Source of the DNA: Hemiscyllium ocellatum
Lineage: Eukaryota
NCBI RefSeq assembly: GCF_020745735.1
Contig: NC_083409.1
Coordinates: 17,752,341-17,816,340 of the forward strand
Direction of reading: 5' to 3'
DNA: 64,000 bases
Shown: positions 2,481 to 55,842 of the stretch, piece after piece
How the letters are laid out: each line of letters begins with the position of its first letter
How positions within the stretch are numbered: position 1 is the first letter of the stretch
Notes under the pieces: model-generated
Told to the model about the DNA's origin: nothing
Seen by the model: the letters and a program-made list of their open reading frames with translations, nothing else
The model's database searches: none
Made by a program: the position numbers and the translations under genes

Positions 2481-2603
2481 CTCCGATCATGATATTTGAG
2501 TCTGGATGACTCAGTCAGACTGTCTAATAAAGTGGAGTTACGCATTTTAGTGTCTGGCAGTTTCTCTGCAGATCCACCTGGTGTTGGGCTGCACTCGTTC
2601 TTT
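2481..2603 (-). CDS. CEP350: CEP350-like coding exon (123 nt, human exon ~21 equivalent)
   Basis: Acceptor tttgtttcatcgtag, donor AG|gtgggc; reads (R)KNECSPTPGGSAEKLPDTKMRNSTLLDSLTESSRLKYHDR(R); phase 2 to phase 2. Confidence 0.8.
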
Positions 2604-3890
2604 CTACGATGAAACAAAGAAAGAAACAACGATCAGCTACTTCTAGCTAAGTCTCTGGATTCAATTCCACCACAGCCAAAGCAGTTTCTTTTTTAATTGA
2701 AACAATTGTTTCAGTGATGGACATCTCAGCAAGCTCATCATCTCCTGTCTCAGTTCAATGGAAAATGGGATCAATACTGCAACACCTACTGTCCCTTGAA
2801 CAGACTATCAGCTAATCTGACTTTACAATCTTGTTCTTTGACAGGTTGCAACAGGTTTTGCACAAGGGAGCGTGCAGACAGGACAAACTTCAATTATATT
2901 CAACACAAGCAAAGGCAATTCAGTTCAAATGAGATGGGTTAATTGAGATCAGGCCTCAGGTCAGGATACAAAATAGTCAAGTTTGGAATTTCCAGAGACC
3001 ATCAAGATTGTACATTCAATTACTGAAGTTTGTCTCATGTTTCTTTCCGAATCAACACTTCTGGAGCCGGTAGGATTTATCCAGGCCTCTGGCTCAAAGT
3101 TGGAGACATGACCACAGCATCACAAGAGCACTTTGTTTTAGACTGAGTAACTTGTGGGATAATTTGCCCAATTATCTTACTAATCTGGAAGATACTGTTA
3201 CCATCCCAAAGGTGGGAAAAAAGCAAGGTATATAATGGGAGGTAAGATGTTATAACAGTCTCTATCACAAGGGACAAAGTATCTTCCAGCAGTTTTTTGC
3301 TCATCCTTCGATAGTTTGAAATTCTCAAATTTTCTGGCCTACCACCACCTTTGCAGTTTTGTATATCTTTTCTTTCAATTTGATGTCACCCACAATTCCT
3401 TTAGCTATGCCCCGCTGTTGGCACCTTTTCATTGTACATTTCTTTTATAAATAAATGTACATTGTTGAGAATTATGAAATAACTGAATAGGTTCTTCTGC
3501 TTTAACATTCTAACCTCTCGTCCCATTCCCATTTAGCTCACTATTACTTTATACCCTTGTGACTGCCTTTAACTTTAGACACTAGTTCAAGAACCAAATT
3601 CCTTCACCTAAAGCTAAATTCTATTATGCTGCATTGAATCTTACCAAAAGGGTCTTTAATTTTGAACTCATTAATCAATCATATTACCAAGTCCCTGACT
3701 GGTTCAAGAACAAAATGTTTGAAGAAACTGTACAGAGCAGTCTACCTCAAATTGCTGCAGAAGGTAAGAGTGCACAATACTATTTTAACTAACAGAGTGC
3801 CTTCTGAATAACAGGATTCTGTTAGACCCCCAAAATTACTCTGACCATAGAATAGAATAGAATTCCTACAGTGTGGAAACAGGCCCTTCG

Positions 3891-5280
3891 AAGTCTGGTT
3901 GAAGATTTGTAGCTCAGGTGTCCGTTGTTGTGGTTCTGTTCGCCGAGCTGGAAGTTTTTGCTGCAAACGTTTCGTTCCCTTGCTAGGGAACATCATCAGT
4001 GCTATTGGAGCCTCCTGTGAAGCGCTGCTTTGATGTTTCTTCCGGTATTTATAGTGGTTTGTTCTTGCCGCTTCCGGGTGTCAGTTTCAGCTGTAGTAGT
4101 TTGTATGTGGGGCGTTCTCTCTACTAACACGTCTAGGAATGGGAGTTGGCTATCCTTTTCCTCTTTTCTCGTGAATCGTATTCCTGTGAGTGTGGCATTG
4201 ATGATTCGGTGTGTTTTTTCTATTTCTGTGTTTTTGATGATTACAAATGTGTCATTGACGTATCTGATCCAGAGTTTGGGTTGGATTTGTGGTAGGGATG
4301 TACGTTCTAACCTTTGCATAACCAACGGAGAATTCACCACAAGGGTACACAGGAAACCAACACACACAGACCAAGTCCTAAACTATGAAAGTAACCACCC
4401 CAACACACACAAACGAAGCTGCACCAGGACACTATTCAAAAGAGCCACAACACACTGCAGTACACCAGAACTGCGAAAAGAGGAAGAGGAACACCTATAC
4501 AAGGTATTCGCCAAAAACGGATACCCACGCAACTTTATCACCAGATGCCTAAGAGATAGACCACGGAATGAGGACATGCCACAATCAAAAGGACTAGCCA
4601 CACTACCATACGTCAGGAGCGTCTCAGAACTGACAGCCAGACTACTGCGACCCTTAGGACTCATAACAGCACACAAGCCAACTTCCACACTCAGACAACA
4701 ACTCACTAGAACGAAGGACCCAATAGCCAGCATGAGCCAAACTAACGTAGTTTACAAAATACCATGCAAGGACTGCACAAAAGACTATATAGGACAAACA
4801 GGAAGACAGCTAACAATCCGCATCCATGAACATCAGCTAGCCACAAAACGACACGACCAGCTATCCCTAGTAGCCATACACTCAGACAACCAGGAACATG
4901 AATTTGACTGGGAAAACACTACCATCATAGGACAAGCCAGACAGAGAACAGCCAGGGAATTCCTAGAGGCATGGCATTCATCCACAAACTCCATTAACAG
5001 ACACATAGACTTGGACCCCATATACAAACCACTACAGCTGAAACTGACACCCGGAAACGGCAAAAAGATCCATCAACAGACACATCAACCACGACCCCAC
5101 ATACAAACTACTACAGCTGAAACTGACACCCGGAAGCGGCAAGAACAAACCACTATAAATACCGGAAGAAACATCAAAGCAGCGCTTCACAGGAGGCTCC
5201 AATAGCACTGATGATGTTCCCTAGCCAGGGAACGAAACGTTTGCAGCAAAAACTTCCAGTTCGGCGAACAGAACCACAAC
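3891..5280 (+). mobile_element. Penelope-like element (Penelope/Poseidon type), 5'-truncated with inversion and inverted pseudo-LTRs
   Basis: Plus ORF encodes RT thumb (RKPTHTDQVLNYESNHP) and GIY-YIG (VVYKIPCKDCTKDYIGQTGRQLTIRIHEH); minus 4113-4320 encodes the RT palm (WIRYVNDTF..LPFLDVLV); 189-bp inverted repeats 3924-4112 / 5095-5283; flanking direct repeat aacaggcccttcg at 3878-3890 and 5281-5293. Confidence 0.9.
5205..5243 (+). ncRNA. Minimal hammerhead ribozyme motif in Penelope pseudo-LTR (second copy on minus strand at 3962-4002)
   Basis: gca CTGATGA t gttccct-agcc-agggaac GAAAC GTT tgc: conserved core, 7-bp stem II, 3-bp stem I, palindromic stem III as in dimer-type PLE hammerheads. 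Confidence 0.7.
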
Positions 5281-5760
5281 AACAGGCCCTTCGGCCCAAC
5301 AAATCCACATCAACCCTCTGAAGAGTATCCCAACCAAGCCTATCCCTTAACACTATTACTCAACATTTACCCCTGACTAATGCACCAAACCTGCACATCC
5401 CTGAACACTATTGGCAATTTAGCACGGCCAATTCACCTCACCTGCACATCTTTGGATTGTGGGAGAAAATCGGAGCACTCAGAGGAAACCCATGCAGATC
5501 CGGGAGAATGTGCAAACTCCACACGGACAGTCATCTGAGGCTGGAGTCACCTGGGTGCATGGCGCTGTGAGGCAGCAGTGTTAAACACTGAGCCACCTCC
5601 TTTTTCCTAAAAGACTGAGTGCATTGATCCTGCCTCTCCTGATCACAGATAATAGCGAAAACATCAAAAACAGTGCATCGCATCAAGCAACAAGCCTTAG
5701 GTTATTAAGCCAAGAAGCTTAATATTATTGATCAGGTTTGGGACAGTGTAAAAATCTTAC

Positions 5761-5921
5761 CTGTCAGGTTCAGTTCTGGTTCGAAGTTGGTTCATGAAGT
5801 CTGAATGTTGCTGCCTCTGTTGGTCCAGCAGCACTGTCACTGGCACAGGAGCTGTTCCATGAGGTGGGTTTGTGGCAGTCAGAGATCCTGCTGCAACCTG
5901 CGCACATGCCAACTCAGTCAT
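5761..5921 (-). CDS. CEP350: CEP350-like coding exon (161 nt, exon ~20 equivalent)
   Basis: Acceptor ttcttgctggtttag, donor AG|gtaaga; MTELACAQVAAGSLTATNPPHGTAPVPVTVLLDQQRQQHSDFMNQLRTRTEPD(R); phase 0 to 2. Confidence 0.85.
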
Positions 5922-6189
5922 CTAAACCAGCAAGAATTAGCACAGCACAGGTTAGAAGACAACTTGGATCACATCTTGCTTTTGAAATCAGAGGCCCCTA
6001 CTCAACCCATCGCATGTGTGCCGCCTCTTTGGAATAGCTATTTGGCTAGACCCCTGCTCTCACAATATTGCAAGTAATTTATTTTTGCAAGTATTCAAAT
6101 TAATTCTGGAACTAATCCTGAATCAGCTGCCACCTCCTTTCCAGATGCTCCCAGCTCTTCTGTGAAACAGCAAAAACCAATGAGAACAT

Positions 6190-7480
6190 CATTAAAATTG
6201 AAGCATCCAGTGTTAAAAAATTCACATGCTCCGTCATTGGGATATGATGGGCTTTTTTCATAATGCTGAGCAAAATCTTATTTGAGGCAAAAAGGAGAAC
6301 TCTAAGAGAAAGGTGAACCACCCGTGGGTAACAAAGGCAGTCAAGGACAGTACCCACAAGGAAAAGAACGACACAGCAGCGGCGGACGAAAAAGGAAAAA
6401 AAAATTGATCATGAAATTAAACTGACAAGATACAAAAATGAATGGCAAAAGTTTCTCCAGGTATGTAAAAAGTGAGTAGCTAATGTGAGCATCGAACCCT
6501 TGGAGGTTCTGATTCGGGAATTGATAATGTATACAGGGAAAACAGCAGATAATTTAAACCAATATTTTACATTGCTCTTCATGGAGGAGAATACCGTTAT
6601 CATCCCAAAGATAGCAAAAAGCAAGGTATTCGTGGGAGGACAAATGCTACAACAGTCTTTGTCACAAAGGACAAAGTAATAACAAACTAATAGGATTAAA
6701 GGCAGACAGGACCTAATGGCCTGTATCAAACATTTTGTTAAGGCAACTGGCTGCAGAGATATTCAAGGCATCAATTGAATTATTCCCGAATCAGTGGATA
6801 CAGGGAGCTTCCAGTGGATTGATGCGCCTGTTCAAGAAAGGAGGGAGACAGAAATCAGGAAAGTTAGTTTAATATCTGTTTTGGCAGAACAGCAGAGTTG
6901 ATTATTAAAGGAAGAAATAGCAGGACATTTGGAAAAGCTTATCATTAAACATGGTAGACTGGATTTTGTGAAAGGGAACTATATTTGACAAATTTGCTAG
7001 AGTTCATTAAGGAGATAAGAAGTAGGGCTGATAAAGGAGAATCTGATGATGTTCTGTATTTGGATTTTAAAAATGCATTTGATAAGGTGCTACATAAAAG
7101 TTAATTGCACAAGATAGGAGCTCACGACATCGGGGGTCATGTATTAGCATGGACTGAGGATTGGTTAACCACAATGGCTGTTGCTGAGACCTCACTTGGA
7201 GTACTGTATACAATGTTTGCTTTCACATTTAAGAAAGGATAAACTAGCATTGGAGGCCACTCAAAAAAAGATTCATTTAGTTGCTTCGTGGATGAAAAGG
7301 TTGGTCTGTCAAGAATAGGTTAGGTCATTATTCAATAGAGTCTGGACAAATAATGGGTGATCTTATGGAAACAATGTTCTGAGGAGCTTGACAGGGGTTG
7401 GTGTTGACTAGATGTTCGAGTACCAGTGAAGTCTCAACCCAGGGGACATTACAGAAGGGAACATTCGTTTTTTAAAAAAT
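6190..7480 (+). mobile_element. Decayed CR1 LINE RT fragment
   Basis: Broken CR1 motifs (plfkkggr, y.df..afdkv.h, dlih.eyc.q). Boundaries approximate. Confidence 0.65.
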
Positions 7481-8700
7481 AAAGATTTTTTTCTCTTTCA
7501 GTGAATGGCTGGGATTCTCTTGCCCAAAAAATTGTGACAGCTAAATGGGGTAGGGGAATGGGTCTGGTGGGTTACTCTTCGGAGGGTGGGTGTGGAATTG
7601 CTCAGCTGAAGCAATGATGCTATGATGCTATATCAAATTATTTTAAAAGAGGGTAGATAGAATTTTGAAATATTAACCAGTTGAGGGCTATGAGGATCAA
7701 GCATAAAAGACAAGTTGAGGCCTGGTTTGGCCCAGCCATGATCTGATAGAATGGGGGAGCAAGCTCAAGGGAACGAATACCCTACTCATGCTCCGATTCC
7801 TTGAGGCTCCATTTCATGCTTTCTTTTCTCCAAAGGGGAGCATGAGACAATGTGTTAAAAGATCTCAGACGTTGTGAAAAGGAGTGAAAATGGGGTGTTT
7901 ATGTGTTGATTCCGATGGCATTAACCAATCAATCACAGCTATGCAGTCATGAATACGAAGGCAATTCCCTCCATGAATAAAGGAAACCTACTACAGAGCT
8001 CATCTAACGGGAATTCTTACCTTCAGTAAACTCTTCCATCACATGACCCAAAATTGCACCCTCAGCTGTTTACTTATTTGTTCACTTCCAGACATGACTA
8101 TTCCAATGTTCTCTTGACTGAACTTTCATCAACTTCAACATATTCAAAAGCTCCACTTACTGCACCCTCTTTCCAAGCCCCTTTTACCCACGATCCTTGT
8201 ACTTGCTGATTCATGACTTGCCAACAGCTTCAGTATAAGAAGTCCTGTCCTTCCGGACATATTTTTCCTTTCTATCTCTGCAATTTCCTTCAATCCTCGA
8301 AACTTTTGAAGTGTCTATGTTCTCCATTTTAGCATTTTCATTTTCACCACCCCAGCTCAGCACTGAAGCTTTCAGCTGCATGGTCATCAGCTATGCAACT
8401 CTGTCCTAACGCAGCTCAAATAGTAACATTTTCTTCCTTTCCAACATTCTATCTCACCTATTTCTTTGACCAAGCATTTGGTCATCTTTCTTAATATCAT
8501 ATGGTATGCTGTTAAGCTTTGCCCTGCTCTTCCTTGACAGTTTACTACATTCGAGGAATGAAATAATTTCAAACTGCAGTGACAATTAACTCAATGCAGC
8601 AATTGTATGAGAGAAATTCCTTCAAAACTCCAGAAAGTACTGGCTCTTCAGCATGACTGGGGGAAAGGGCCATCTTGCCAAGTACACTAGAAGAAAGTAC

Positions 8701-8832
8701 CTCTGTGACCTGACGTGCTGTATCAGCCATCAGCCTTGCAAGTTCCACCTGCTGAGTGATCAATTTAGTTGTGGACTCTTGCAGCATCTCTTGGCGAACC
8801 TGTACAAACTGCTGCAGACTTTCTGCACATGC
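8701..8832 (-). CDS. CEP350: CEP350-like coding exon (132 nt, exon ~19 equivalent)
   Basis: Acceptor ctctttgtgttctcag, donor GAG|gtactt; ACAESLQQFVQVRQEMLQESTTKLITQQVELARLMADTARQVTE; phase 0 to 0. Confidence 0.85.
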
Positions 8833-9384
8833 CTGAGAACACAAAGAGAGGTTTTCACGTCCAGCAATTGATAATTCAGATACTTTAATCAAGAGACAAA
8901 GCACTATTAAAATGCAATGTGAAATTGACTTATGATCCAGTAAGCACACTGCTCACATGTTTCATCATGCAACTTTAGCTCACTGACACGGCTTCTGTTT
9001 TACAATCAAGCTTTTAAGCCTTTCCCTCTCCTCCAACGTCACATATAAGCACAGTAACCTAGTCATAGTGTGATTTTGTTTTTTTGATTTCCAGTATTTG
9101 CAGTTCTTTGGTTTTTTTTTTAATTTAACCTGGTCATGGTATTGCGAGATTGTTTCCATGATGGGGAGATGTATTCAACCTTAAAACTAAAAACCAGACC
9201 ATGCAGAACTGAAAAATCAGGAATTAATTATTTAATTCATTCTCAGGATGTAGATATCCCTGACACTGACTGTCCAACCATAACTGGCATTAAAAGGTGA
9301 AAGTTAGTGATCTTCTTAAACCACGGCAACCCATGTGGCTGCAAGATACTCCCAATGTATGTCAGACCATTGTAGGCAGCAAAG

Positions 9385-9880
9385 GAAGAGCAACATAATT
9401 TAATGTCATAACTATATGCGGCATTCCCAGGCACTGGAATGGAGGCCTTGCTTTATGAAGAAAGCTTGAATAAGCTTGTATGCTTCTCTCTGGAGAGAAG
9501 GACGAAGAGAGAATACCTGATCGAGGCATAAAGAGAGGAGTAGATAGAGTCAATAGCCAGAGACTTTTCCCCAGGGCAGGATTGACTGGTGCGAGAAGCC
9601 ATAGTTTGAAGATATTAGGAGGAAAGTACAAAGGAAATGTCAGAGGTAGGTTCTTTACGCAGAGAGTTTTAAATGCATGGAATGCTTGCCAGCTGTGGTG
9701 GTGGAAGCAGAGTCATTGGGGATACTTAAGCGACTGCTGGCCATGCACATGGATAGCAGTGAGTTGAGGGGGTGCGCAGGTTAAGTTACTGTATTTTACA
9801 TTAGGATTCAATCTCTGCACAACATCTTGGGCAAAAGGGCCTGTTCTCTGCTGTACTTTTCTATGTTCTATGTTCTATAT
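9385..9880 (+). mobile_element. CR1 LINE 3' end
   Basis: ORF 9480-9767 (RGVDRVNSQRLFP...RGRFFTQRVLNAWN); ends aagggcctgttctctgctgtac with (tatgttc)n tail. Confidence 0.8.
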
Positions 9881-10769
9881 TTGCTGCCCTGTTCTTCCAG
9901 ACAGAATAGGTCATGAGTCCAGATCTGTCAAAGGAGCCTTCAATGAGGTATTGCAGAGCATCTTGTAGATGGTGCACCTTGTTGCTACCGCATACTGATG
10001 ACAGAGGGAATAGGCACTTAAGGGGGTGGACATGATTCAAATCATGCTGATGTTTTGTAATGGATGATGTTGAGCTTCCTGAGTATCGCGAGAACTGCAC
10101 TCCTCCAGGTAAGTGGGGAGTATTCCATCATAATGCTTTCCTAGACCTGTTCATCTCTCAGCTCCATTTCCTCCTTTAAACACTCCTTAAAATCCAACTT
10201 CACCAAAATTTTGAATATCTTGCATGACATAAACTTTTCCATTTGATGCTTTTTTGAAATATTTTGAGATACTTTATTATTTTAAATGCTTTTTTCCAGC
10301 AAATTGCTGTGATGAGATGATACTTTTATTTTGCATGTGTTTTGAGGGATAAGGCTGATGAAAAGCGAAAGGGCTTTTCGGCAAAAACAAATTTAAACTC
10401 AGTTGGATAAGAGAATGAAGAGGCTGATTGTTCTACTCTTGTTCCTATATCCCAATGACAAGTTGTGAATATGCATTCCACAATTCTGGTGATCTCGTGG
10501 TAGGCCATTGCTTGCTAGCATGGTCCTCAACTGAGGAACAATTCAAAAAAAGCTGCAGTCTATTTTTATTGCCATGATCTTTATTGGTCAAGTGGATACT
10601 CCTTACCCTCATGGTTCTACTCTCTCTGTGTGGGTTCTATCAAAGAAATCGCAAATATGGCATCAGAGGCAGTTCTGCGCTGTGTTCCTCAGATGGGGAC
10701 AATCTGAAGCAAAAACTGCCGTTTAAAGAAGCTAACGTTTTCACGGTGTCATTGACATCTTCAGGTCAT

Positions 10770-11130
10770 TGCAAAGTCCTTCTCAGCCAATGGAGTTCTT
10801 TCAAAATATCGTCACGCTGTCCAAGAAGGGCCTTTTGACAAGCTCCTAAAAAGACAGCATCTACAATGGTGAGGAATTCATATTGAGCAGGATAACAGGA
10901 GAGCTCTCTTAGACTTCTTCAAGTATTAAAATGGATCTTCTCTATCCACTGGAATAGAAGATGGGAACTTGCTTTAACGTCTTGCCTGAAAGTGTCATCT
11001 CTAAGAATGCAGCAGTCCTGCTCTAGATTGAGTGCGTATGGTCGGCTTCCATTCAAGTCGAAGCATGGGGCTTGAAACAAAAACGTTTTCATTCAGAGGC
11101 AGTTGCATTCACAATGAGATGAACTGACAT
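10770..11130 (-). mobile_element. DeuSINE-like (AmnSINE/SacSINE related) fragment
   Basis: Pattern cattgcaaagtccttctcagccaatggagttct...ctttaacgtc..tgaaag....tct..gaatgcagca, similar to 57540-57800 and 58540-58690. Confidence 0.45.
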
Positions 11131-12108
11131 TTGTATCACACCTTTATACTATAACATCCCATGGACGTTGACAGGAACATGATTACAAAATATGACAAGT
11201 AGCCACATAAGAAGTGCTCAGATAAAACATAGTTTTTAAGGAGCTTCTTGAAGAAAGACAGAGACACATTCAGGTTCAGTAAACAAATGTCAGTGCCTGG
11301 ATGGTCAATAGTTGAAGGAGCCACTGTCAATCAGACACTAAAATAGACTGCAGCCTTTTTTTGAATTGTTCTTGGGTTGAGGGCTATGCCAGCAAGCAGG
11401 CCTTTATGGCCCACCTCGAGATCACCAGAATTACAGAATGCAAATTCACGACTTGTCATTAAGGCATTAAAACACAGGAGCAAGCTTGCACAAGTAACTA
11501 AGAACAATAGCAAGGATTATTTTGATTAAGATTTCTGACTCTTAAGATACAGAATTCCAAGAGGTAAAAACACAGGAACCTGCAACCTTCCAAACTTACT
11601 CACCCAAATCAAAGTCAGCATGACCTCCCTTTGTCCCACTCCTGTAACCTGCTCCAGCCCTATAACCTCCCTCATCATCTACATTCCTGATGTCATCTTG
11701 TTCAACCCCACTCCATCAAGTTGTGTGTCTCAGTCTTTAGAATTCACTCCTTAAGGTCTTACAATCTGTCCAGGTTTTCTAAAGAATCTCTGAAATGTTA
11801 ACTCTTCTTTCTTCCCACAGATGCTGTTGAGTGTCACCAGCAAACTATGTTTTTGCTTCTAAAACTGTACCTTCTCCTGTCCCCATGGTCTGGGCCTGTC
11901 ATTGATTTTCATGATGACATCTTCATAATGTGCTTTTGTTGAGTGGGGCAGTTTACCGGTGGAACAGAACAGGGCAGGGGTGGGAAGAGGTTTGGCTTCA
12001 ATGTTAAAGGCACTTTATAATTATAATTTGTTTATTCTTATTGCACGGTGAGAAGCAGTCAACACTGAATTATTTGCATTTCCAGACACCTGTTACATGT
12101 TCAAGTAC

Positions 12109-12219
12109 CTGTACAGCTTTCTGTCTGGCCTCCTCTAGCTGCCTCTGACTTGCAGCAGCTTCCTGCTCGGCCTTCAGCTTCAGCAGGGCTATGTCGTGCT
12201 CATGGCTCAGCTGTTGGGC
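12109..12219 (-). CDS. CEP350: CEP350-like coding exon (111 nt, exon ~18 equivalent)
   Basis: Acceptor ctttgtttgtgtccag, donor CAG|gtactt; AQQLSHEHDIALLKLKAEQEAAASQRQLEEARQKAVQ; phase 0 to 0. Confidence 0.9.
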
Positions 12220-12760
12220 CTGGACACAAACAAAGATTAAATAGGAACCATCACTCTACATTCCACTGCTCTGCTCTGTGAAAAACTGGTATTTAAATTT
12301 GCAGTGTCCAGAGAGAGAGAGAGTAACAATTGAAATGCAAAGGCATCAAAATCTTAAGAGTAACAAATGACAAGATTTTAATCAATTAATTTTAATATTG
12401 CAACTTTATAAATAAAAAAAATTTTCTCATAAATCTCATCATAATGGCTCAAATTTTAGAAAGCTGAAATTTCTTGAAAACTTGGCAAGTTTGCCCTGCT
12501 TCTATCAGTCAACTTGGAAAGTGCAGTCATGCGCAGGTTCGATGCTAATATCTGCACATTTAAGATTAGGCATTGTCCTAAATCACAACCCAAGGGTAAG
12601 TAAATTTAATCTCTAGTTTTGGAATAATCTTTGTTTTGCCTGATTTAACTGAAGAACGTTGCTCAGAATGTTGCCTGGTTTGGAAAACGAGCGCAGCCAT
12701 TATCACTTAAGACAATTTCACAAAACCATTTCTGAAAGAGCACAAGGCATAGACCTGTAC

Positions 12761-12924
12761 CTTTAGGATCTGAGCCAATGACACAGTCTCTTGTTGAGCA
12801 AAGGCTATTCCCCGGGTCATGTCTATCTCCGATAGCTGACGGATGGACTCTTCCATAGCATCCAAGTAAGTGTGTTGAGCAGTCATGTGGTGTTGGATAC
12901 TTGGTGGGGAGCTGAGCATCGAGG
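12761..12924 (-). CDS. CEP350: CEP350-like coding exon (164 nt, exon ~17 equivalent)
   Basis: Acceptor ctttggttattgcag, donor AAG|gtacag; (A)SMLSSPPSIQHHMTAQHTYLDAMEESIRQLSEIDMTRGIAFAQQETVSLAQILK; phase 1 to 0. Confidence 0.9.
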
Positions 12925-13189
12925 CTGCAATAACCAAAGTGAAAAGTGTAATTCCAACTTTTACAATTAGTTCAATAATGCATTGGGATCATAGGGTTAA
13001 CTGCACGCCTCTCCAGGATTCAAAACAAGTTCGGGAACTGCGTAAAAAAATGACAAGGGGCAAGACATTGAAATTTTCATGAGATTCACAGGATAAAACA
13101 AATAGCAAAGCGTGCGGAAAATCCAAACCCAATCATTGTATTTGGGTCCTGGTGAATGATCAGGAATGCAACAAAGGTTCACCAGACTT

Positions 13190-13610
13190 GTTTCTAGGAC
13201 ATTCTCATGGAGAGAGATTGGGAAAACTGGACCTGCATTCTCCAGCATTTTGAATTGATTTCATTGAAATCTACAAAATACTTAAAGGGTAGATGTAGGT
13301 AATGTTTCCCCCGTTGGGGAGTCTAGGACTGGTGGGACAACTTATAAGTGAGACCATGTCATAAGTCTGAGCTGATGATAATTCTGTTGTTACTTCAGGG
13401 TCATGAATCTTTTGGAGTTCACTGCCACAGAGAGTTGTGAAAGCATAGTCATCAATTATGTTTTATGTAAAAATTGACGGATTTGATTTCCAACAGTGTA
13501 TGGGGTGATGGGAACAGGGTGGCTAAAACGATACAGAAGCACTGATCAGCCATGATTGTACTGAATGACAGGGGATGGCTCAACAGGCCGAATAGCCTAC
13601 TTCTGCTTAA
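13190..13610 (+). mobile_element. CR1 LINE 3' fragment
   Basis: gaaatctacaaaatacttaaaggg..gatcagccatgattgtactgaatgacaggggatggctcaacaggccgaatagcctacttctgct tail. Confidence 0.65.
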
Positions 13611-13824
13611 TGTTCCTCAGACAGGATCCGACCACTTGAATGGAAAAGCACCTGCTTCCACGTCACGTGGCACCTCACCATTTCATCCAGTCATCACTAT
13701 GCCTGTCACTTCAACTTGGTTGTCTACTTACTCAGGGTTTTATTTTTTTTTTAAACTACTCCAATGGAGACGGTTGGGACAAACCAATGACAGTTACAGA
13801 AAACATGATTCCAAGAGTTCCAAC

Positions 13825-14033
13825 CTGCAGCAGAGGATGTGGAGGGCCAGGCTGCAGTAACACTGATGTCGGCTAGAGAAGGTGAAGGTGTGGAGGTAGT
13901 AGCACGCAGCTGCCTTGTCCCCTCTCTGGATGTTATCACTGCGTCATTCTGAAAAGGGCTCTGAGACATGGAACTCACAGTGGAATGGAACAATGAAGAG
14001 CTTGTGCTTTTCTTTGATGACTTCCCGTGAGCA
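13825..14033 (-). CDS. CEP350: CEP350-like coding exon (209 nt, exon ~16 equivalent, Ser/Thr-rich)
   Basis: Acceptor ttttgtgctttcag, donor CAG|gttgga; (S)AHGKSSKKSTSSSLFHSTVSSMSQSPFQNDAVITSREG...PSTSSAA; phases (2 to 1) fit both neighbours; similarity weaker because of low complexity. Confidence 0.7.
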
Positions 14034-14800
14034 CTGAAAGCACAAAATTTACACAATCACAAATGTTGACAACTGCCAAAATGAGACATCACTTAAACCA
14101 TTTAACACTGCAGATTTCATGCCATCAAGTATCTGTTTGCTGAAGCTCTGCTTTAAACAATCTGTTGGACTCGGTCGGCATTAGGGATAAACAGAGTCAA
14201 AAAGTGTGGCACTGGAAAAGCACAGCATGTCAGGCAGCATCCAAAGAGGAGACTCCATGATTCCGGCACAAGCCCTTCATGAGGATAAACAGTCATCCTT
14301 ACTGGATGGGCCCATGTTCCCTCTACTATTCCCAAAAGCCAATCTTCTACAATACCATTCCCACTCTTAAATTTAAACAACAATGTACTGACTGGACACA
14401 GCAGCCTAAAGGCTGATTAACCTGCCAAACCTGACAACCCAGACAACAGCTTCGCAACATACTTGCCAAGGCCTAAAAGGCCCTTTGGGTTTACCAATCC
14501 ATTTGAGTCATCAAGAGGATTCATCAGTGACTACCATCACACTAGCCACCGTATGGTTGGTAGCTCTCTGGGATACCAGAGGAAAAATAAAGGACAACGA
14601 CATCACATGCACATCAGCAGACAGCACACAATTATACAAGATATGAAGAGTTTCCAAAATCACATACACTAAATAAAGCAAATGCTCACTGATGACAATT
14701 TCCCCTTGATGAAGTCCAAGAAATGCCAAGAACCCAACTTCTATGAGCAGCAAGGAGAATTCACCCCAGCTCAACATATGTTGGACTATCCCGTGCAGGA

Positions 14801-14973
14801 GAAAGTGAGGACTGCAGATGCTGGAGATCAGAGCTGCAAAATGTGTTGCTGGAAAAGTGCAGCAGGTCAGGCAGCATCAAAGGAGCAGGAGAATCGACGT
14901 TTCGGGCATAAGCCTGAAGAAGTGCTAATGCTCGAAACGTCAATTCTCCTGCTCCTTTGATGCTGCCTGACCT
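14801..14973. mobile_element. Palindromic non-autonomous Penelope-derived element
   Basis: Arms aggtcaggcagcatcaaaggagcaggagaat (from 14864) / attctcctgctcctttgatgctgcctgacct (to 14973) around gtttcgggcataagc-CTGAAGA-...-GAAAC-gtc. Confidence 0.7.
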
Positions 14974-15968
14974 ATCCAGTGTAGGCTTACTAAAATATAC
15001 TGAGTATCTGGATTATTTACGTGGCACTAATACCACTCGGCCATCGCCTCCCCTTGAAATGAAACTGTAACTTTATTAATTTGGTGACTTCCATAACTTC
15101 ACTTTGTATTTTCCATCTACTTACTGTCTCTTCCACCAGTAGAAGCAGTTCTTCCAACATCCTGACCAGGTTTGAGGTCTCCTCTGAACCACTATTCAAT
15201 CAAAATGATCAGCAATTTATCGAATCTCTCTTGATTACTATAATCAGCGAATGTCAAGTTAACACTTTCTGGTTCCTGTGCACAGCCTTGAAGTCCTTCC
15301 TGAATTAGTGTTCCCAATACTGGGGACAACATTCTAACTGTAGCTTAACCAGTAATTTGTGATGGTTTAACATCATTCATTTTTGTACTCCAGTCCCAAT
15401 TTATAAAAGCTTAATGGCTCTGATGAACTGATGATGATCTAAATACTGCACAAGGCTGAGCTTCACTAACATATCTCCATTAATAGTTGGTTTCACAGAG
15501 CAGTGAGCATTGAATAAAAAACAAATAGAATCAACTAAGGTGGGCTACACGGCAAAGGATTCTTGTAACCACGTTTTATTATTATTATTCCATATTTGAA
15601 ATTGTGCCCATGTTTCAGGTTACTGGCAGACCCCAGTTTACAAATGGTTTCTGTTCTAGAGTGCATCTGCAAGTCAATTGGTGCACAAGTTGTAACACAC
15701 TGTAAAAAGTCATAAGCACAGAAAATGTTTGTGTGCAAGATCTTTAAAATTACACCCTCGGATGAGATTACGTGTGAAAGAACAAGCATTCTGAAGCCTG
15801 GGATCCTCTATGTATCTATCCTGCCACTGTTGACTCTGTTGTGATTTGAGTGTCAGAAGAGTGCAACTATAAGCTGTCAAGCAGGTATTGGTTGTTTCTA
15901 ATATATGCACAGCTTCAGGAATTGATAACAGAAAGTGACCGACAGAAGGTACATACGCCTGGTCATAC

Positions 15969-16140
15969 CTATATGCAGTTAATGGATCTCTGAATTCATC
16001 TCGATTGCTCTTCATAATGTTACTTTCCAGGGTGGTAGATCGCAAGGGACTGCGGGAGGTGTTGACCTTCCGTGATTTGCTGCGACTACTGGATTTGACA
16101 GGTGTAGCACTGGCTACAGAATCCTCCAGATACCTTCCAT
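15969..16140 (-). CDS. CEP350: CEP350-like coding exon (172 nt, exon ~5 equivalent)
   Basis: Acceptor gtttctgtttctatcag, donor AG|gtatga; (D)GRYLEDSVASATPVKSSSRSKSRKVNTSRSPLRSTTLESNIMKSNRDEFRDPLTAY; phase 1 to 2. Confidence 0.85.
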
Positions 16141-16667
16141 CTGATAGAAACAGAAACAAAGTTTAAGAAGTCAAAAAGGAGCATGCATTCCATTATCACA
16201 ATCAATGGGATTGGTTAGTAAGCACAAGTTTCTCTTAAACTGTTGCTGTCAGAATATAGAAGAGATAGATGCTAAGTTAATTCTTCTTGTCCACCTCCTC
16301 AAATTCTGTGGACCAGCACAAAGTGATAAACCAGACATTTGGGGGGAATCTGCAAAGGGCAACAGGTGTTGACACAGATGGAAGCGGGAGATGACCACTT
16401 CAGGAAGGGAATGGAGGGTTGACTTTGCCTGCTAAGCCTTACCAATGAAGCTCCATAAATTAGTGAGAAGGAAAAGATTCCATAGCCTCAGTCTCTGTTG
16501 CAAATGCTTTCAAAACACTGCAAAATGTCAGTGCATGACCCTCGACCACTTAACTTAATTTCACCAGGGTTATTACTTTTATCTGATTAACAATGGCCAG
16601 CATGAGGTCAAGAGTAACTGTTGATCTAATTACCATGAACAATTCATTTTGTATTCCTTCCACTTAC

Positions 16668-16782
16668 CCAGTCCGCTAATTTTTCGAGTAGCACTGCTCA
16701 AAGCTTTCTTAGTATCCATCACTGTGTCTGTCACTGCAGTAGTGGTGGGTACAGCTTCAAGCCTGTTTTCTATGTGCCGCAA
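16668..16782 (-). CDS. CEP350: CEP350-like coding exon (115 nt, exon ~4 equivalent)
   Basis: Acceptor ttctttcatcccaag, donor TGG|gtaagt; LRHIENRLEAVPTTTAVTDTVMDTKKALSSATRKISGL; phase 0 to 1. Confidence 0.9.
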
Positions 16783-18443
16783 CTTGGGATGAAAGAAAAA
16801 TAATGAATCAAACACAATGCAAGTTAAAATAGTATGTTTCCTGCAGTAAAAACTCTTAGGATAGAGCCAGGCAGGAATCAAAGGGGAACTAGAAAACATG
16901 CAGGGTGTCAAACATATATTTTGAGGGAAACTGGAAGCTAAGAAGCAGGAAATGTCAGGGTGAGACTGGGAAGTATGGAGCTAAAATGTTCAGCAGACAG
17001 AATGACCTGAGATATGGAGGGGGGCAGGGCAGAAAAGAGTTGGAAAAGTAAACGGGAGCCACAAACAAATCTGTACATAGGAACTTTGAAACTGAAGGAC
17101 TGGGTTAAGGCAGAGAATGAAATTAAGTAACAAGAGGGTGATAAGCGAGCAGGGCGATGATGCAGAAGATAGAATGTGTAGAAATGTACAGCATGGAATT
17201 AAAGTTTTGGAATGGTTTTGGTAGGTGCCACCCTGTCAGTCTTAGAGAGCTTCTGTAAGTGTATTAAGCAAATGGTACAGATTGGTGCTGAGTGTTGAAG
17301 GTGGAGGAAGTGCAGGTTTGTGCATGTGGTGTTAGCCCTCAGCTGTTCTGTCCCAAATAGTGTCAAGCTTCTTCAGTATTACCAGATCTGCACTCATCCA
17401 GGCAAGTTGAAAGTATTCCATCACACTACTGAATTGTGCAATGTAGATGGTGAACTGCAATATGTGCTAGTAATTCAACCAGGCAGCCAAAAACAATCAT
17501 GGGACAGCAAATGTTATTTTAACTGGCACTTTATGAACTGTTGCTCTTAATAAACCAACAAAAATTATACACCTGAAATACTCGAAGGTCACCGCATTTT
17601 CATGGTGTCAGAGTAGTCAGTTGAGGCTGCAAGTGAGAAGGCACTCTGCCATTAAGTTTTATTTAAGGCAAATGTGCATGCTTGTTTCAGTGAGTTATAC
17701 GACAAATAAAGTGATGTGTATACCCCTGCATTAGGTTTCTATTACTAAGCATTGATTATGTCAGTCTGTTTGACACTGGAATATTTGATCAACCAGCACT
17801 CCTGGTCCCATTGGTGACAGTTAATAAAACATTTACTGTATCTTCAAACAGACATGGCGGGAAAGGCTTAGTAGGTCTGGCAGCATCTGTAGAGAGAAAT
17901 CAGTTAACATTTCAGGTGCAGTGACTCTTCCTCACAACATGTAGAGAAATAAGAGTTATTGTTGCAGTGTTCAGAGGAAGGATCGCTGAACCAGAAATGA
18001 TTACGGATTTCTCTCCACAGATGCTGCCAGACCTTCTGACCCTTTCCAGCAATTTTTTTTTGTTTCAGATTTCCAGCAGTTCTTATGGTTTTTGTGCTGT
18101 ATATTCAATCAAGGTTTTGCTGGGGATCTGATTATCCAGTACTAACATCAACTGGTTATTATGTCATAACAATCGGAGCCCGACATCATAATATCTTCCT
18201 TGTAACAATGACCAGAATTCAAAAAATACATCATTGGCAGAGAGCCATTTTGAGATGTCCCATAACCACAAAACTTCCGATTTAAATGTAAATATTTCTT
18301 TCTTTATGACAGTCCTTTGGCCATAGGATCAAATGATCTCTAATCTGCCACACAGTATTGATGACTGAACCCAATAGTCACCACAACAGTGATTGAAGGC
18401 ACTACAACTAACTGGAGTAGTTTGCAAATCAGCACCACTGTAC

Positions 18444-18529
18444 CTTGCCTCGTATTTTGAATCTTTATCAGTCTCTGATTTAGGAGGGCTGACTTGTTAG
18501 ATGTTTGACTCCACAACTTGTCAGCTCAC
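18444..18529 (-). pseudogene. CEP350: CEP350 exon-2-like segment, copy 1 (86 nt; start codon reads TTG)
   Basis: Acceptor ctttgcttttgttttag, donor AAG|gtacag; 13 nt leader + TTG TGG AGT... = (L)WSQTSNKSALLNQRLIKIQNTRQ + 1 nt; same length and register as recalled human MRSSKSKEVPLPNPRNSQSKDTVQ (S3,S6,L11,N13,R15,T22,Q24 shared). Confidence 0.65.
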
Positions 18530-19529
18530 CTAAAACAAAAGCAAAGCAAGGATAATCAACAACACAGATTTTCAGATTCAGATTAGATTTCATTACAAGC
18601 TTGCAATCAGAAACTCGAATACTTATTTTGGATTTGGATTTTCAATTTGGTCTAAAACAGCAATATTAAGTCGACATTATTTAATGATAATGAAATACAA
18701 CATTTTGTATAAACAATTGAAATCTGGTTTGTATACCAATGTTGAGCCTTACAGCACAATCAAATCCTTCACCAGTGTGGGACGTTCTCCAGTCCTGAGC
18801 GATAAATTAGCTTCAGTGAGGAATGTAAAAGAATTAAGTAGTAAGTTCAAACTAGAGCATCTGTGTGTATATACACCAGAACCACAATCAAATAATGTCA
18901 GTAAGCATCAACAGAAGCCCAAGCCCGTGTTCTCCTGGCTTTTATTACATAACAATTGGAGCCACAACACGCAACATCATAATACTCCTTTGGAACAATG
19001 ACCAGAATTCAAAAAATACCTCACTCGCAGAGATCCATTTTGAGATGTCCCATAATAACAAAGATCACTGAACCAGAAATGTTAAAGGATTTCTCTCCAC
19101 AGATGCTGCCAGACCTACTGAGCTTTCCAGCAATTTTTTTTTGTTTGTTTCAGATTTCCAGCAGTTTTTTTGGTTTTTGTGCTGTATATTCAATCAAGGT
19201 TTTGCTGGGGATCTGATTATCCAGTACTAACACCAACTGGTTATTATGTCATAACAATCGGAGCCACGACATCATAATACCTTCCTTGTAACAATGACCA
19301 GAATTCAAAAAATACTTCATTGGCAGAGAGCCATTTTGAGATGTCCCATAACCACAAAACTCCCGATTTAAATGTAAATATTTCTTTCTTTATAACGGTC
19401 CTTTGGCGATAGGATCAAATTATCTCTAATCTGCCACACAGTATTGATGACTGAACCCAATAGTCACCACAACAGTGATTGAAGGCACTACAACTAACTG
19501 GAGTAGTTTGCAAATCAGCACCACTGTAC

Positions 19530-19616
19530 CTTTGTCTCGTACTTCGACTCTTTTTCAGTCTCTGATTTAGTAGGGCTGACTTGTTAGATGTTCTACTCCA
19601 CAACTTGTCAGCTCAC
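19530..19616 (-). pseudogene. CEP350: CEP350 exon-2-like segment, copy 2 (87 nt; TTG start, extra nt before donor)
   Basis: Tandem duplicate of 18444-18529; (L)WSRTSNKSALLNQRLKKSRSTRQ; same acceptor and donor. Confidence 0.6.
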
Positions 19617-21564
19617 CTAAAACAAAAGCAAAGCAAAGATAATCAACAACACAGATTTTCAGATTCAGCTTAGATTACATTCCAAGCTTGCAATCAGAAA
19701 CTCAAATATTTATTTTGGATTTGGATTTTCAATGTTTATTTGCATTACGATATTTGGTCAAAAAAAGTAAAATTAAGTAGACATTATTTAATGATAATAA
19801 AATACAACATTTTGTATAAACAATTGAATTCTGCTTGGTATACCAACATCGAGCATCAAATCCTTCACCAGTGTGGGATGTTCTCCAGTCCTGAGAGATA
19901 ATGTAGCTTCAGTGAAGAATGTGCAAGTAGTAAGTAGTAGGTTCAAACTAGGAGCATCTGTGTGTGTACACCAGAACCAAAATCAAATAATGTCAGTAAC
20001 CATCAACAGAAGCCCAAGTCCTTGTTCCCCGGTTATTTTGCCATAACAATTTGAGCCATGGCATCATAATACCTACCTTGGAACAATGACCAGAATTCAA
20101 ACAATACCTCATTCACAGAGAGCCATTTTGAGATGTCCCATAACCACAAAGGTCACTGAATCAGAAATGTTCACGGATTTCTGTCCAAAGATGCTGCCAG
20201 ACCTGCTGGGCTTTTCTAGCAATTTCTGTTTTTGTTTCAGATTTCCAGCAGCTCTTTTGGTGTCTGTGCTGTATATTCAACCAAGTTTTTGCTGGGAATC
20301 TGATTATCCAGATTATCATGATCACCAAGTGGCTATTATGGCAGAACAATTGGAACTATGACATCACAATACCTCCCTTGAAACAATGACCAGAATTCAA
20401 AAAGTACTTCATTGGCAGAGAGCTATTTTGAGATGCCCCAGAACCACAAAACTCACTATTTAGATGTAAGTATTTCTTTCTTTATAACAGTCCTTTGGCC
20501 AAATATTTGCCCCTGCAAATATTTGGTTGTTTTTCTGAGACTCTACCATTCATTAAACAACTGCTAATCTGGCCAAGTCCCATTTCCTGGTCCCTACATT
20601 ATCTCATCTCTCTTCCTTCTCGCAATGTAAATGTTCCATTTCTGTAAATTAATGGTTAATAGTCATTTACTGACGTTAGTAGAATTAAACCATGACTGAC
20701 ATTTTTTTTCTTACATGACAGACCTCTTTTCACAACTCTATCAGTTCACCTCACGTTAAATGCATCTTCCCTTTCCACAAGACAAATTATTTATCAGAAA
20801 TGTGCAATAAATACATTGTAACATTTGTCATTCTGATTGAGACAGAGTCACAGAGAGTCACAGAGAGAAATAGATTGTCACAGAGTGTCACAAAGAGTCC
20901 AATAGTCACAGACAGCCACAGCATAGAAATCTTTTCCGAACATGAGATATACATAACCAAACAGGGAGTTTGATAAAGCAACTACAGCAGGTGGTAAAAG
21001 GTCACAATAGGGATATGTTACTGCAGCTGCAATCTGCAGAAAAAGTCCAACTTATGCTCAGACACAAATGCCCAATTTGTGTCTGGCAGGTCAACTTCCC
21101 TTATATGGTGAAAATAAAGAGAATTAGCCAAGGAAAGCCTCCACCACCCGCCCTTGGAAAATGGTGGATAAATGAGCTCTTCAAATATTATTGCCTGTTA
21201 CAGCAAATGCCTTTGATACAGAAACAAAGAATGGTTCGAACAAACATTTATTTGAAAGTGACTGTAAAGTTAGAGGTTGGCTTGTGTCATGGCAGAGATG
21301 TTTCTCATCAGGAACTGGAAAAGAGCTGACACACGGTTATATGCTGTGACTACTCTGAAGGTTAAATGATAGTTTCAATTTTTAAAAAATAACTGAGGGA
21401 GAAAGGTAAATCAATTTGATGACGATTAGTTTGGGACACTTGATGTTGTTGTGAACGTACTGTTCACTGCAAACAATTAAACACAATCCAGAACAGCCAT
21501 GTGCTTTTCAGGTAATAATGTAGATTTACAAGGAAGCACAACATTAAAACAATGGAACAATTTA

Positions 21565-26700: not shown

Positions 26701-27330
26701 TCAAACATCTGCAAAGTTCACTCTGACTGCAATTGAAAACTCACCACATTATGAAACACTATCAATGAAGAGTAATACATGCTGCTACGCTTGTGATACT
26801 TGTGTCATGAATGACCAAAAGATAATAAGACATAGAATAAACAGAGCAGGGGTGGGGAACCTGCGGCCTTCCAGGCCATTGTGTGTGGCCTTTTGAATGA
26901 ATCCAAATTTTGCAGAACAAATCTTTTATTTTTTCTTAATTTTTTTTTCATCCTTTATTATTTTAATTTAATTTAAACATGAATGTATTTAAAATACCAG
27001 AGAGTAAAAGAAAATTCAGCAAAATAATCCTCACAAACTGAACGCCACAATTAAAAAATTGGTAAGTAATAAGGGCTATTTCGACTCCTGCTATGCTCAT
27101 GATTTAGTTATAATGCGACTCTAGAATGTACGTTATCTTCCCTGCCTGACTGGAGCCACTTCTGCCTGAGGCTGGTTGGCGAGAGCCTGGGTGTATCCAG
27201 TACACCAGTGTTTAGAAACTGATGACAACAGTGCACGTGGCTTTCCATTTGAAGTGAAATTTGAGAATAGTTACACAGTTTAACAGTATCACCATTTATA
27301 CAATGGAAGTCTCTTGGATGAGGCCTTATT

Positions 27331-32292: not shown

Positions 32293-32523
32293 TTTTTTTT
32301 TATTTCAAAATATACTTTATTCGTAAATATTCATAAATAATTTGATACACTGTACATTGGGTAATGCCATACATATGTTCACATTAACATACACAGTTTA
32401 GAATTTTCCTTTTTATATGCAAGTCTGTGCATTTCTCACTCCTATGCCCTTATATTGGGCTGAGGCGTCAGCAGAGCCCAAATGACTGCATGGGCCCCCT
32501 GATCTTCTTTAGACAGGCAGATG

Positions 32524-35931: not shown

Positions 35932-35932
35932 T

Positions 35933-51960: not shown

Positions 51961-51989
51961 GCGAAGTCAAGGCAGGTCCGAATGTTTTG

Positions 51990-54993: not shown

Positions 54994-55514
54994 CCCTTTT
55001 TCAGAATCACATTGACAGAAAAAAAACTGCAATTAACAGCCCAGACAGAGAAAGCTGCTCAAAATCACAGCCACAATTGAGTTTAAGGAAAACACTGTGG
55101 AGATTTGCTCAATAACATGAGAATCCTGTCCCTTTAAACAGTGACAAAACCTTAAATTGGAACTGACAGCTCAGCAGGAAGGAGATCTGGTTTACTGAAG
55201 CAGAGAATTCTGAGGTTCACATTGTTTTGTACAGCTGACAGTCTTCAGCAACTTCAAGAGAATTTACTTGGCATACAGTCAACACTTCCGCATCAAACAC
55301 TCCCCGGACAAGGACAGCATGAACTTTGACATAGTGTAATGTCTCTCAAAACTGTCGCAGTGACCGACTTCAACATCCAAACCTCAGACGTATCTCTGAG
55401 CCAGTCCTGACAAGGAAGGGAGTTGAAATTCAGTGCTAACAATGACCTTTGTCCTGTCAGCTCAGCTCTATTCTAAGTAAAGTTGTGTCTCCTCTGTGGA
55501 CTGTCTCCAACACT

Positions 55515-55842
55515 TTACACACATTCTGATCTGCTGATGCTCTCTCTGAGGGAGACGGGAGGGTCACATGGGTGAGGGCACAGGACAAACGAGCGTCGGA
55601 CTCCCAGTCAGACCCAGAGAGGGTCAGCATGCTGCTGACACTGTAGGTGCTGTCCGAAGCTCGCAGGTAGTTGCTGATCTGAACCCCGTCCGAAATGACT
55701 GCACCATCCTTCTTCCACTGCACCTCCAGCTCATCGGGATAGAAGTGATTGGCAAGGCACACCAGGGTGGCAGTGCCCTTGGCATTGACCTGCTCCAGGG
55801 AGGGGGGCAGCAGGGTCAGCTTGGGCTGAGAGTTCTCACGGC
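55515..55842 (-). CDS. Immunoglobulin light-chain constant exon, shark type I (NS5/sigma-cart-like), with 1-nt deletion near 3' end
   Basis: Acceptor gtttctcttgtctttcag, phase-1 start; (G)RENSQPKLTLLPPSLEQVNAKGTATLVCLANHFYPDELEVQWKKDGAVISDGVQISNYLRASDSTYSVSSMLTLSGSDWESDARLSCALTHVTLPSP with the C1-set Cys-Trp-Cys intact. The native ending SISRSECV* lies in another frame (TAA 55517-55515); the shifted frame stops at 55457. Isotype assigned from recalled shark sequences. Confidence 0.9.

What the first reader, a model, noticed from the sequence alone, without database searches (positions are those of the whole stretch)
2481..16782. In-frame 'mini-CEP350': exon-5 equivalent splices directly to exon-16 equivalent
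Seen: eight minus-strand exons with canonical splice sites join into a stop-free 1187-nt frame. The exon ending ...EFRDPLTAY (15969, phase 2) is followed only 1.9 kb later by a phase-2 exon leading into SPPSIQHHMTAQHTYLDAMEES. Established (recalled, verify): in human CEP350 these two points are ~1,110 codons apart (about exons 6-15), which cannot fit in a 1.9-kb intron. That region overlaps the N-terminal microtubule-binding part, while CAP-Gly and the FOP/CEP43-binding C-terminus lie further 3', beyond this window. Inference: a deleted duplicate that kept frame and every splice site could encode a truncated centriolar scaffold with altered microtubule binding, or be a young pseudogene.
Basis: partly seen in the sequence, partly recalled or inferred. 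Interest (0 to 1): 0.8.

Follow-up and report, generated by a model that had tools for sequence, protein, structure and literature searches.

The report
Shortened CEP350 copy beside shark antibody gene
This is a real, intron-containing, internally shortened extra copy of the centrosome gene CEP350 lying next to a decayed shark antibody light-chain exon; it is most likely a passenger of antibody-gene amplification rather than the working gene, though its frame is oddly well kept.

Summary
Eight minus-strand exons (16782-2481), all with AG/GT borders, join into a stop-free 1187-nt frame. There is no N in the window.

I could not confirm with any tool that about 1,000-1,100 CEP350 codons are missing between 15969 and 12924. 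That rests on recalled human sequence. One database job was lost to my own frame slip, and the other searches were blocked by a length filter.

Context favours a degenerating duplicate:
- The start-codon exon is tandemly duplicated. Both copies read TTG where ATG is expected, with an in-frame TGA upstream.
- No CpG-island promoter lies upstream.
- A frameshifted orphan Ig kappa constant exon lies 36 kb upstream.
- LINEs and a retroviral env fragment fill the interval.

The scan found this before on other DNA of the same genome. Earlier, unchecked notes report many mini-CEP350 copies over about 10 Mb beside Ig kappa clusters, with the same gap and the same TTG exons.

The first AUG of the spliced 5' end (16719) is in frame with good context. 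By my estimate the frame stays intact by chance only if neutral divergence is below about 1-2%.

Verdict: a passenger duplicate that is young or dead (about 0.55). A retained mini-gene is not excluded (about 0.25).

The parts
17978..20501 (-). About 2.3 tandem units of roughly 1086 bp that carry the start-codon exon equivalents
   Evidence: the repeat finder spacing of 1086. Self-blastn matches 17978-19407 to 19060-20499 at 88%. MAFFT of two whole units gives 92.2% identity, 83 substitutions and 12 gap events.
19530..19616 (-). Start-codon exon equivalent, distal copy A (87 nt). It reads TGA GCT GAC AAG TTG TGG AGT and contains no ATG.
   Evidence: It has a ttttag acceptor and a GT donor.
18444..18529 (-). 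Start-codon exon equivalent, proximal copy B (86 nt). It has the same TTG and TGA, a 1-nt deletion near its end, and 8 substitutions against copy A.
16668..16782 (-). Exon Ea (LRHIENRLEAVPTTT...). The first ATG of the spliced 5' end is at 16719-16717, in frame, in the context ACAGTGATGG.
15969..16140 (-). Exon Eb (DGRYLEDS...EFRDPLTAY), which ends in phase 2.
14034..15968 (-). It is contiguous and holds SINE-like repeats.
13825..14033 (-). Exon Ec (209 nt, AHGKSSKKSTSSS...), required to keep the frame.
   Evidence: No Pfam family matched.
12761..12924 (-). Exon Ed (SMLSSPPSIQHHMTAQHTYLDAMEES...).
12109..12219 (-). Exon Ee (AQQLSHEHDIALLKLKAEQEA...).
8701..8832 (-). Exon Ef (ACAESLQQFVQVRQEML...).
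5761..5921 (-). Exon Eg (MTELACAQVAAGS...QLRTRTEPDR).
2481..2603 (-). Exon Eh (KNECSPTPGG...RLKYHDR). No further exon was recognised in 1-2480.
55460..55864 (-). Context: an orphan Ig kappa light-chain constant exon (C1-set) with a shifted C-terminal tail. No V domain was found in the window.
   Evidence: Pfam C1-set, E = 2e-20. It is 94% identical to an 'immunoglobulin kappa light chain-like' protein of Hemiscyllium ocellatum. tblastn finds only the C part.
27329..37265 (-). Context: two tandem LINE copies (endonuclease, reverse transcriptase, and a ZCCHC3-like ORF1) between the Ig exon and the CEP350 copy. They hold the only CpG-rich DNA upstream.

Best explanation
This is a DNA-level partial duplicate of CEP350, with its introns kept, in an orectolobiform (bamboo/epaulette-type) shark. 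It was carried along as a passenger when a block holding an Ig kappa light-chain cluster was multiplied. Before or early in that amplification, a deletion that left the remaining exons intact removed the exons for roughly 1,000 residues of the N-terminal third. The frame survives because the exons left on each side have matching phases, which happens by chance about one time in three. The copy here has TTG at the ancestral start, a duplicated start exon, and no recognisable promoter island. It sits in decaying, transposon-filled DNA next to a broken Ig constant exon. It is therefore most likely a young or dying pseudogene, possibly still transcribed, and not the working centrosome gene. Shown: the exon structure, the open frame, the 5' lesions and the neighbours. 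Inferred: the CEP350 identity and the size of the gap (recalled human sequence), the multi-copy status (earlier unchecked notes) and the lack of function.
For: - Exons, phases and the open frame were rebuilt.
- Both start-exon copies read TTG with an in-frame TGA four codons upstream and contain no ATG. Copy B has a 1-nt deletion.
- Between the two tandem copies the exon has diverged more (8 substitutions and 1 indel in 87 nt) than its flanking intron (2 substitutions in about 120 nt), so nothing is protecting it.
- No exon was recognised by eye that would link the start exon to 16782 in frame (no reference sequence).
- There is no CpG island between 19.6 and 27.3 kb; only the LINE bodies are CpG-rich.
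- Exon CpG observed/expected (0.34) is about the same as in the introns (0.31).
- The neighbour is an orphan Ig kappa C exon with a shifted tail and no V segment. LINEs and a retroviral env fragment lie between them.
- Only one CEP350-like copy is present in the window.
- Earlier scan notes, which I did not check, report many sister copies over about 10 Mb with the same gap, the same TTG duplicated exon, a second in-frame loss that includes CAP-Gly, and some wrecked copies.
Against: - All 8 exons and all 16 splice dinucleotides are intact. My estimate gives a chance of about 12% at 1% neutral divergence and about 1.5% at 2%. The tandem start-exon units, which a note says are shared with a copy 4.7 Mb away, differ by 7.8%. 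If that much time had passed without constraint, the frame should be broken.
- The first AUG of the spliced 5' end (16719) is in frame and in good context, so loss of the old start need not prevent translation.
- A follow-up on a sister copy judged its frame better kept than a dead gene's (unchecked).
- No tool result here confirms the CEP350 identity or the size of the gap.
Confidence: 0.55

Rival explanations
1. A retained mini-CEP350 gene family. The copies are transcribed and translated from the in-frame ATG at 16719. They give a much shorter CEP350-like protein that lacks most of the N-terminal microtubule-binding domain, and, according to earlier notes, also the CAP-Gly block, but keeps the central coiled coil and perhaps the C-terminus. 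Selection keeps the frame open.
For: The frame and all splice sites are intact. The first AUG is in frame with G at -3 and G at +4, and there are no upstream ATGs in either start-exon copy. The neutral survival estimate is low unless the copy is very young, while in-window duplicates have diverged by 7.8%. Notes report several copies with fully open frames, and one follow-up reports unexpected frame preservation (unchecked).
Against: No promoter island is present. The start exon is decaying freely. The surroundings are decayed. Notes also list broken and wrecked copies. The two searches of 70-262-aa database proteins with these exons found nothing, which is weak evidence given the filters. There are no expression data. 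An in-frame exon-block deletion is expected by chance one time in three.
Confidence: 0.25
2. This is the ordinary CEP350 orthologue, and sharks simply have a short linker here. On this reading nothing was deleted.
For: I could not fetch any shark or other CEP350 to show the missing exons exist in this lineage. All copies noted so far are said to share the gap.
Against: The locus has no ATG at the expected start and no promoter island, and it lies in Ig and transposon DNA. Notes describe many copies, some of them broken. The N-terminal domain (human residues 1-900) binds microtubules directly in the human protein (PMC4357431).
Confidence: 0.07
3. An assembly collapse or misjoin removed the exons between 15969 and 12924.
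For: None was found. This is only the general possibility in a repeat-rich, multi-copy region.
Against: The window has no N and the introns read as ordinary unique and SINE-like sequence. The splice sites on both sides are intact and the phases match. Notes report the same structure at many separate places, which a random collapse would not reproduce.
Confidence: 0.03

Closest known systems
CEP350 / CAP350 (human, 3117 aa; centriolar and microtubule-anchoring scaffold)
   Same: By recollection, the translated exons match the human N-terminus (about residues 40-134) and the coiled-coil stretch from about residue 1285 onward. Exon phases and introns are kept, so this is a genomic copy and not a retrocopy.
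   Different: It lacks roughly 1,000 residues. By the published map these would include most of the N-terminal microtubule-binding domain (1-900; two independent regions, constructs 1-560 and 555-900) and the start of the alpha-catenin-binding middle fragment (976-1931) (PMC4357431). It has no ATG at the expected start. The CAP-Gly domain and C-terminus lie outside the window.
Partial gene copies carried inside segmental duplications (passenger pseudogenes or truncated paralogues)
   Same: It is an intron-containing fragment of a housekeeping gene that was copied together with a neighbouring multigene family, here the shark Ig light-chain clusters. It has a 5' lesion and transposon infill.
   Different: The frame and all splice sites are unusually clean, and earlier notes say the same in-frame gaps recur in many copies.
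Shark Ig light-chain 'cluster' organisation (many separate V-J-C clusters)
   Same: The neighbour is a kappa-type C exon, 94% identical to an annotated Hemiscyllium ocellatum kappa-like chain and 76% identical to a Heterodontus francisci kappa chain.
   Different: Here only a frameshifted C exon remains. No V domain was found within the 8 kb upstream that the window covers.

Membership tests
CEP350 (orthologue or paralogue) | Significant sequence similarity to CEP350 proteins | tested here: inconclusive
   Two searches with exon-bearing open frames returned nothing, because only proteins of 0.55-1.75 times the query length are candidates. The one unfiltered search was wasted on the wrong frame. 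The Atlas, PDB and Pfam gave nothing. The identity therefore rests on recalled human sequence and on an unchecked sister report.
CEP350 (orthologue or paralogue) | CAP-Gly domain | not testable with these tools
   It would lie 3' of 2481, outside the window. Earlier notes say sister copies lack it (unchecked).
CEP350 (orthologue or paralogue) | N-terminal microtubule-binding domain (human residues 1-900, PMC4357431) | tested here: inconclusive
   Only about 165 residues of coding sequence lie before the SPPSIQHH exon. The 3.0 kb between 15968 and 12925 cannot hold about 3 kb of further exons. The mapping to human residues is recalled and was not aligned by a tool.
CEP350 (orthologue or paralogue) | C-terminal FOP (CEP43)-binding region | not testable with these tools
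   It lies outside the window.
Working orthologue of CEP350 | Start codon, in-frame 5' exons and a promoter | tested here: not met
   TTG stands at the expected ATG in both exon copies, with an in-frame TGA upstream. There is no in-frame link to the exon at 16782. There is no CpG island upstream.
Processed pseudogene (retrocopy) | Absence of introns | tested here: not met
   Seven introns of 0.5-3.3 kb with AG/GT borders are present.
Ig kappa light-chain cluster (neighbour) | C1-set constant exon with kappa-type similarity, plus V and J segments | tested here: inconclusive
   The C1-set exon is present and kappa-like. Its tail is shifted, and no V domain was found in the window.

The most novel reading that the evidence does not exclude
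The mini-CEP350 copies form a selectively retained, translated gene family that was amplified with the shark Ig kappa clusters. Each would start at the in-frame AUG equivalent to 16719 and would encode a compact CEP350-like coiled-coil protein without the two microtubule-binding modules. That would be a new centrosome- or cytoskeleton-related factor, or a competitor of full-length CEP350.
Probability: 0.2. Interest if true: 0.65.

Novelty: new member of a known kind. Interest (0 to 1): 0.35.

Why it matters
If it is only a passenger, its value is as a marker. A recognisable CEP350 fragment with fixed lesions (the TTG start, the duplicated exon, the in-frame gaps) repeated beside Ig kappa clusters would let one reconstruct how shark light-chain clusters multiplied. 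It would also show where the first cluster lay.

If the frame is kept by selection, sharks would have a multi-copy, much shortened CEP350 relative that lacks the parts that bind microtubules. That would be unexpected for a gene I recall as single-copy in other vertebrates (not checked here).

A full-text search for CEP350 together with shark found no relevant paper.

Tried and rejected
- **Unfiltered protein search (my slip).** I sent search of protein representatives the reference 12756-12920, which is out of frame by two bases. The six hits are repetitive, unrelated proteins.
- **The search for homologous proteins.** I queried the 150-aa open frame around exon Eb and the 127-aa frame around exon Ef. 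Both returned nothing. Candidates are limited to 1.75 times the query length, so full CEP350 proteins could not appear.
- **Other libraries.** The ESM Atlas with exon Ed gave only weak bacterial look-alikes. PDB searches with exons Ed and Eb gave none. Pfam on all eight exons gave nothing meaningful.
- **The look-up of encoding contigs.** The intact LINE ORF2 is not on record. For the Hemiscyllium and Scyliorhinus Ig proteins the files were too large for DNA. Two Chiloscyllium punctatum Ig kappa loci were fetched (L001, L002), but they hold no CEP350 exon within 10 kb.
- **Exon searches in the window.** I looked by eye for an exon linking the start exon to 16782 and found none convincing. No further exon was seen in 1-2480.
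- **Rejected readings.** It is not a retrocopy, because introns are present. There is no second CEP350 copy in the window.
Full report
**Observation**

On the minus strand, eight exons each begin after an AG preceded by a pyrimidine tract and end before a GT:

| Exon | Coordinates | Length (nt) |
|---|---|---|
| Ea | 16782-16668 | 115 |
| Eb | 16140-15969 | 172 |
| Ec | 14033-13825 | 209 |
| Ed | 12924-12761 | 164 |
| Ee | 12219-12109 | 111 |
| Ef | 8832-8701 | 132 |
| Eg | 5921-5761 | 161 |
| Eh | 2603-2481 | 123 |

Joined, they give 1187 nt with one stop-free frame, while the other two frames are full of stops. The window contains no N, and the 1935-nt intron 15968-14034 reads as ordinary contiguous DNA with SINE-like elements. 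The 209-nt exon 14033-13825 is needed for the frame, because going straight from 15969 to 12924 would shift it.

**Identity and size of the gap**

This is the weak point of my check. The peptides (LRHIENRLE..., DGRYLEDS...EFRDPLTAY, SPPSIQHHMTAQHTYLDAMEES..., ALLKLKAEQEA..., QLRTRTEPDR) match my recollection of human CEP350. No tool confirmed this.

- The single unfiltered database search was lost because I gave a reference two bases out of frame.
- The word-indexed search accepts only proteins up to 1.75 times the query length. Exon-sized open frames therefore could not reach a protein of 2,000-3,000 residues.
- The Atlas, PDB and Pfam have nothing for these segments.

What the sequence shows directly is limited. 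Only about 165 codons lie between the first exon and the SPPSIQHH exon, and the 3.0 kb between 15968 and 12925 cannot hold another 3 kb of exons.

From recollection, exon 14033-13825 begins like the human segment that follows exon 5. If so, the gap lies in the 900-nt intron 13824-12925 rather than in the 1.9-kb intron. This is an untested lead.

The published map of human CAP350 gives 3117 residues. It places a microtubule-binding N-terminal domain at 1-900, with two independent binding regions, and a middle fragment at 976-1931 (PMC4357431). If the recalled alignment is right, most of that N-terminal domain is gone.

**The 5' end**

- *Duplicated start exon.* Upstream of 16782 lies a tandem array of about 2.3 units of 1086 bp (17978-20501). 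Two units each carry an exon with a strong acceptor and a GT donor: 19616-19530 (87 nt) and 18529-18444 (86 nt).
- *Lost start codon.* Both exons read TGA GCT GAC AAG TTG TGG AGT. TTG stands where the ATG of CEP350 is expected, an in-frame stop lies four codons upstream, and neither exon contains any ATG. The proximal copy also has a 1-nt deletion.
- *No in-frame link.* Neither copy splices in frame to 16782, and I could not recognise a linking exon in 16783-18440.
- *No protection of the exon.* Between the two units the exon has 8 substitutions and 1 indel in 87 nt. The 120 nt flanking it have 2 substitutions, so the exon is not being protected.
- *No promoter island.* There is no CpG island between the start exon and 27.3 kb. 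The only CpG-rich DNA upstream is two LINE bodies.
- *A usable downstream AUG.* On the other hand, the first AUG of start exon plus next exon is at 16719. It is in frame and has G at -3 and G at +4.

**Neighbours**

- At 55864-55460, on the same strand, is an Ig C1-set exon (Pfam E = 2e-20).
- It is 94% identical to an 'immunoglobulin kappa light chain-like' protein of Hemiscyllium ocellatum, 91% identical to a Chiloscyllium punctatum protein and 76% identical to a Heterodontus francisci kappa chain.
- Its end is shifted relative to those chains, and no V domain is detectable in the 8 kb upstream that the window covers. It is an orphan, broken constant exon.
- Between it and the CEP350 copy lie two tandem LINEs, one with an uninterrupted 1138-residue ORF2.
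- A retroviral env fragment and other reverse-transcriptase debris also lie in that interval.
- The window holds only one CEP350-like copy.

**Other copies**

Earlier notes of this scan, which I could not check, report the following:

- Dozens of CEP350 observations in this genome, spread over about 10 Mb of the same piece and on other pieces.
- Several 'mini-CEP350' copies with the same gap of about 1,100 codons.
- A second in-frame loss of about 900 residues that includes CAP-Gly.
- A copy 4.7 Mb away with the same duplicated TTG start exon.
- Copies interleaved with Ig kappa segments and broken RNase L.
- Some wrecked copies.
- One follow-up that called a sister copy a truncated duplicate whose frame is better kept than expected for a dead gene.

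I tried to obtain sister or related loci myself. The Hemiscyllium and Scyliorhinus files were too large to return DNA. Two Chiloscyllium Ig kappa loci held no CEP350 exon within 10 kb.

**Dead or alive**

An in-frame result from an exon-block deletion is expected one time in three, so the kept frame at the junction is not in itself evidence of selection. The intactness of 395 codons and 16 splice dinucleotides is more telling.

I used this frame's own stop-mutability (3.4% of point changes give a stop) and the indel-to-substitution ratio seen in the tandem units (12 to 83). The chance that everything stays intact is about 35% at 0.5% neutral divergence, 12% at 1%, 1.5% at 2% and below 0.1% at 4%. 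The indel ratio from repeat DNA may be too high, so these figures are pessimistic.

The tandem units themselves differ by 7.8%. If, as a note says, that duplication is shared by distant copies, and if the copies were never constrained, the frame should have broken. The duplication could, however, predate the copying event in a then-functional parent, so the argument is not closed.

Exon CpG observed/expected (0.34) is no higher than in the introns (0.31), which gives no sign of protection.

**Conclusion**

The structure is real. The best reading is an intron-containing, internally deleted CEP350 duplicate that travelled with an Ig kappa cluster block. It has lost its original start and its obvious promoter, and it now sits in decaying DNA. 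I put this passenger-pseudogene reading (young or dead) at about 0.55, a retained and translated mini-gene at about 0.25, the ordinary orthologue at about 0.07 and an assembly artefact at about 0.03. The rest is unassigned.

It is a new member of a known kind, namely partial gene copies inside segmental duplications. Its main interest is as a marker of Ig cluster amplification, unless the tests listed under next steps show constraint or expression.

Noticed in passing
window 27329-37265 (minus strand): Two tandem LINE copies, 92.6% identical to each other. The distal copy has an uninterrupted 1138-residue ORF2 (endonuclease, reverse transcriptase, zf-RVT). Upstream of it is a stop-free 526-codon stretch that looks like ORF1. 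The ZCCHC3-like RNA-binding and zinc-knuckle domains were shown only on the proximal copy's 446-aa ORF1. The distal copy looks potentially active. These LINEs hold the only CpG-rich DNA in this part of the window.
   Followed up: partly
window 55460-55864 (minus strand): An orphan Ig kappa constant exon whose C-terminal tail is shifted relative to annotated shark kappa chains. No V domain was found within the 8 kb upstream that the window covers.
   Followed up: partly
database hits P0009 and P0013: Proteins filed under Aeromonas veronii and Salmonella enterica are 73-82% identical to this shark Ig light-chain constant domain. They sit on contigs of 507 and 990 bases. This looks like fish or shark DNA contaminating bacterial assemblies.
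   Followed up: no
window 42063-43199 (plus strand): Open frames that resemble a retroviral envelope protein (weak Pfam TLV_coat match, E = 3e-4). This is an endogenous retrovirus fragment.
   Followed up: no
window 18444-18529 versus 19530-19616: Between the two tandem units the start-exon equivalent has diverged about three times more than its immediate intron flanks. Part of the excess comes from CpG decay.
   Followed up: partly
window 50001-52000: A strong GC skew (+0.53) coincides with proline-rich open frames and a weak reverse-transcriptase match. It is probably a degraded retroelement.
   Followed up: no
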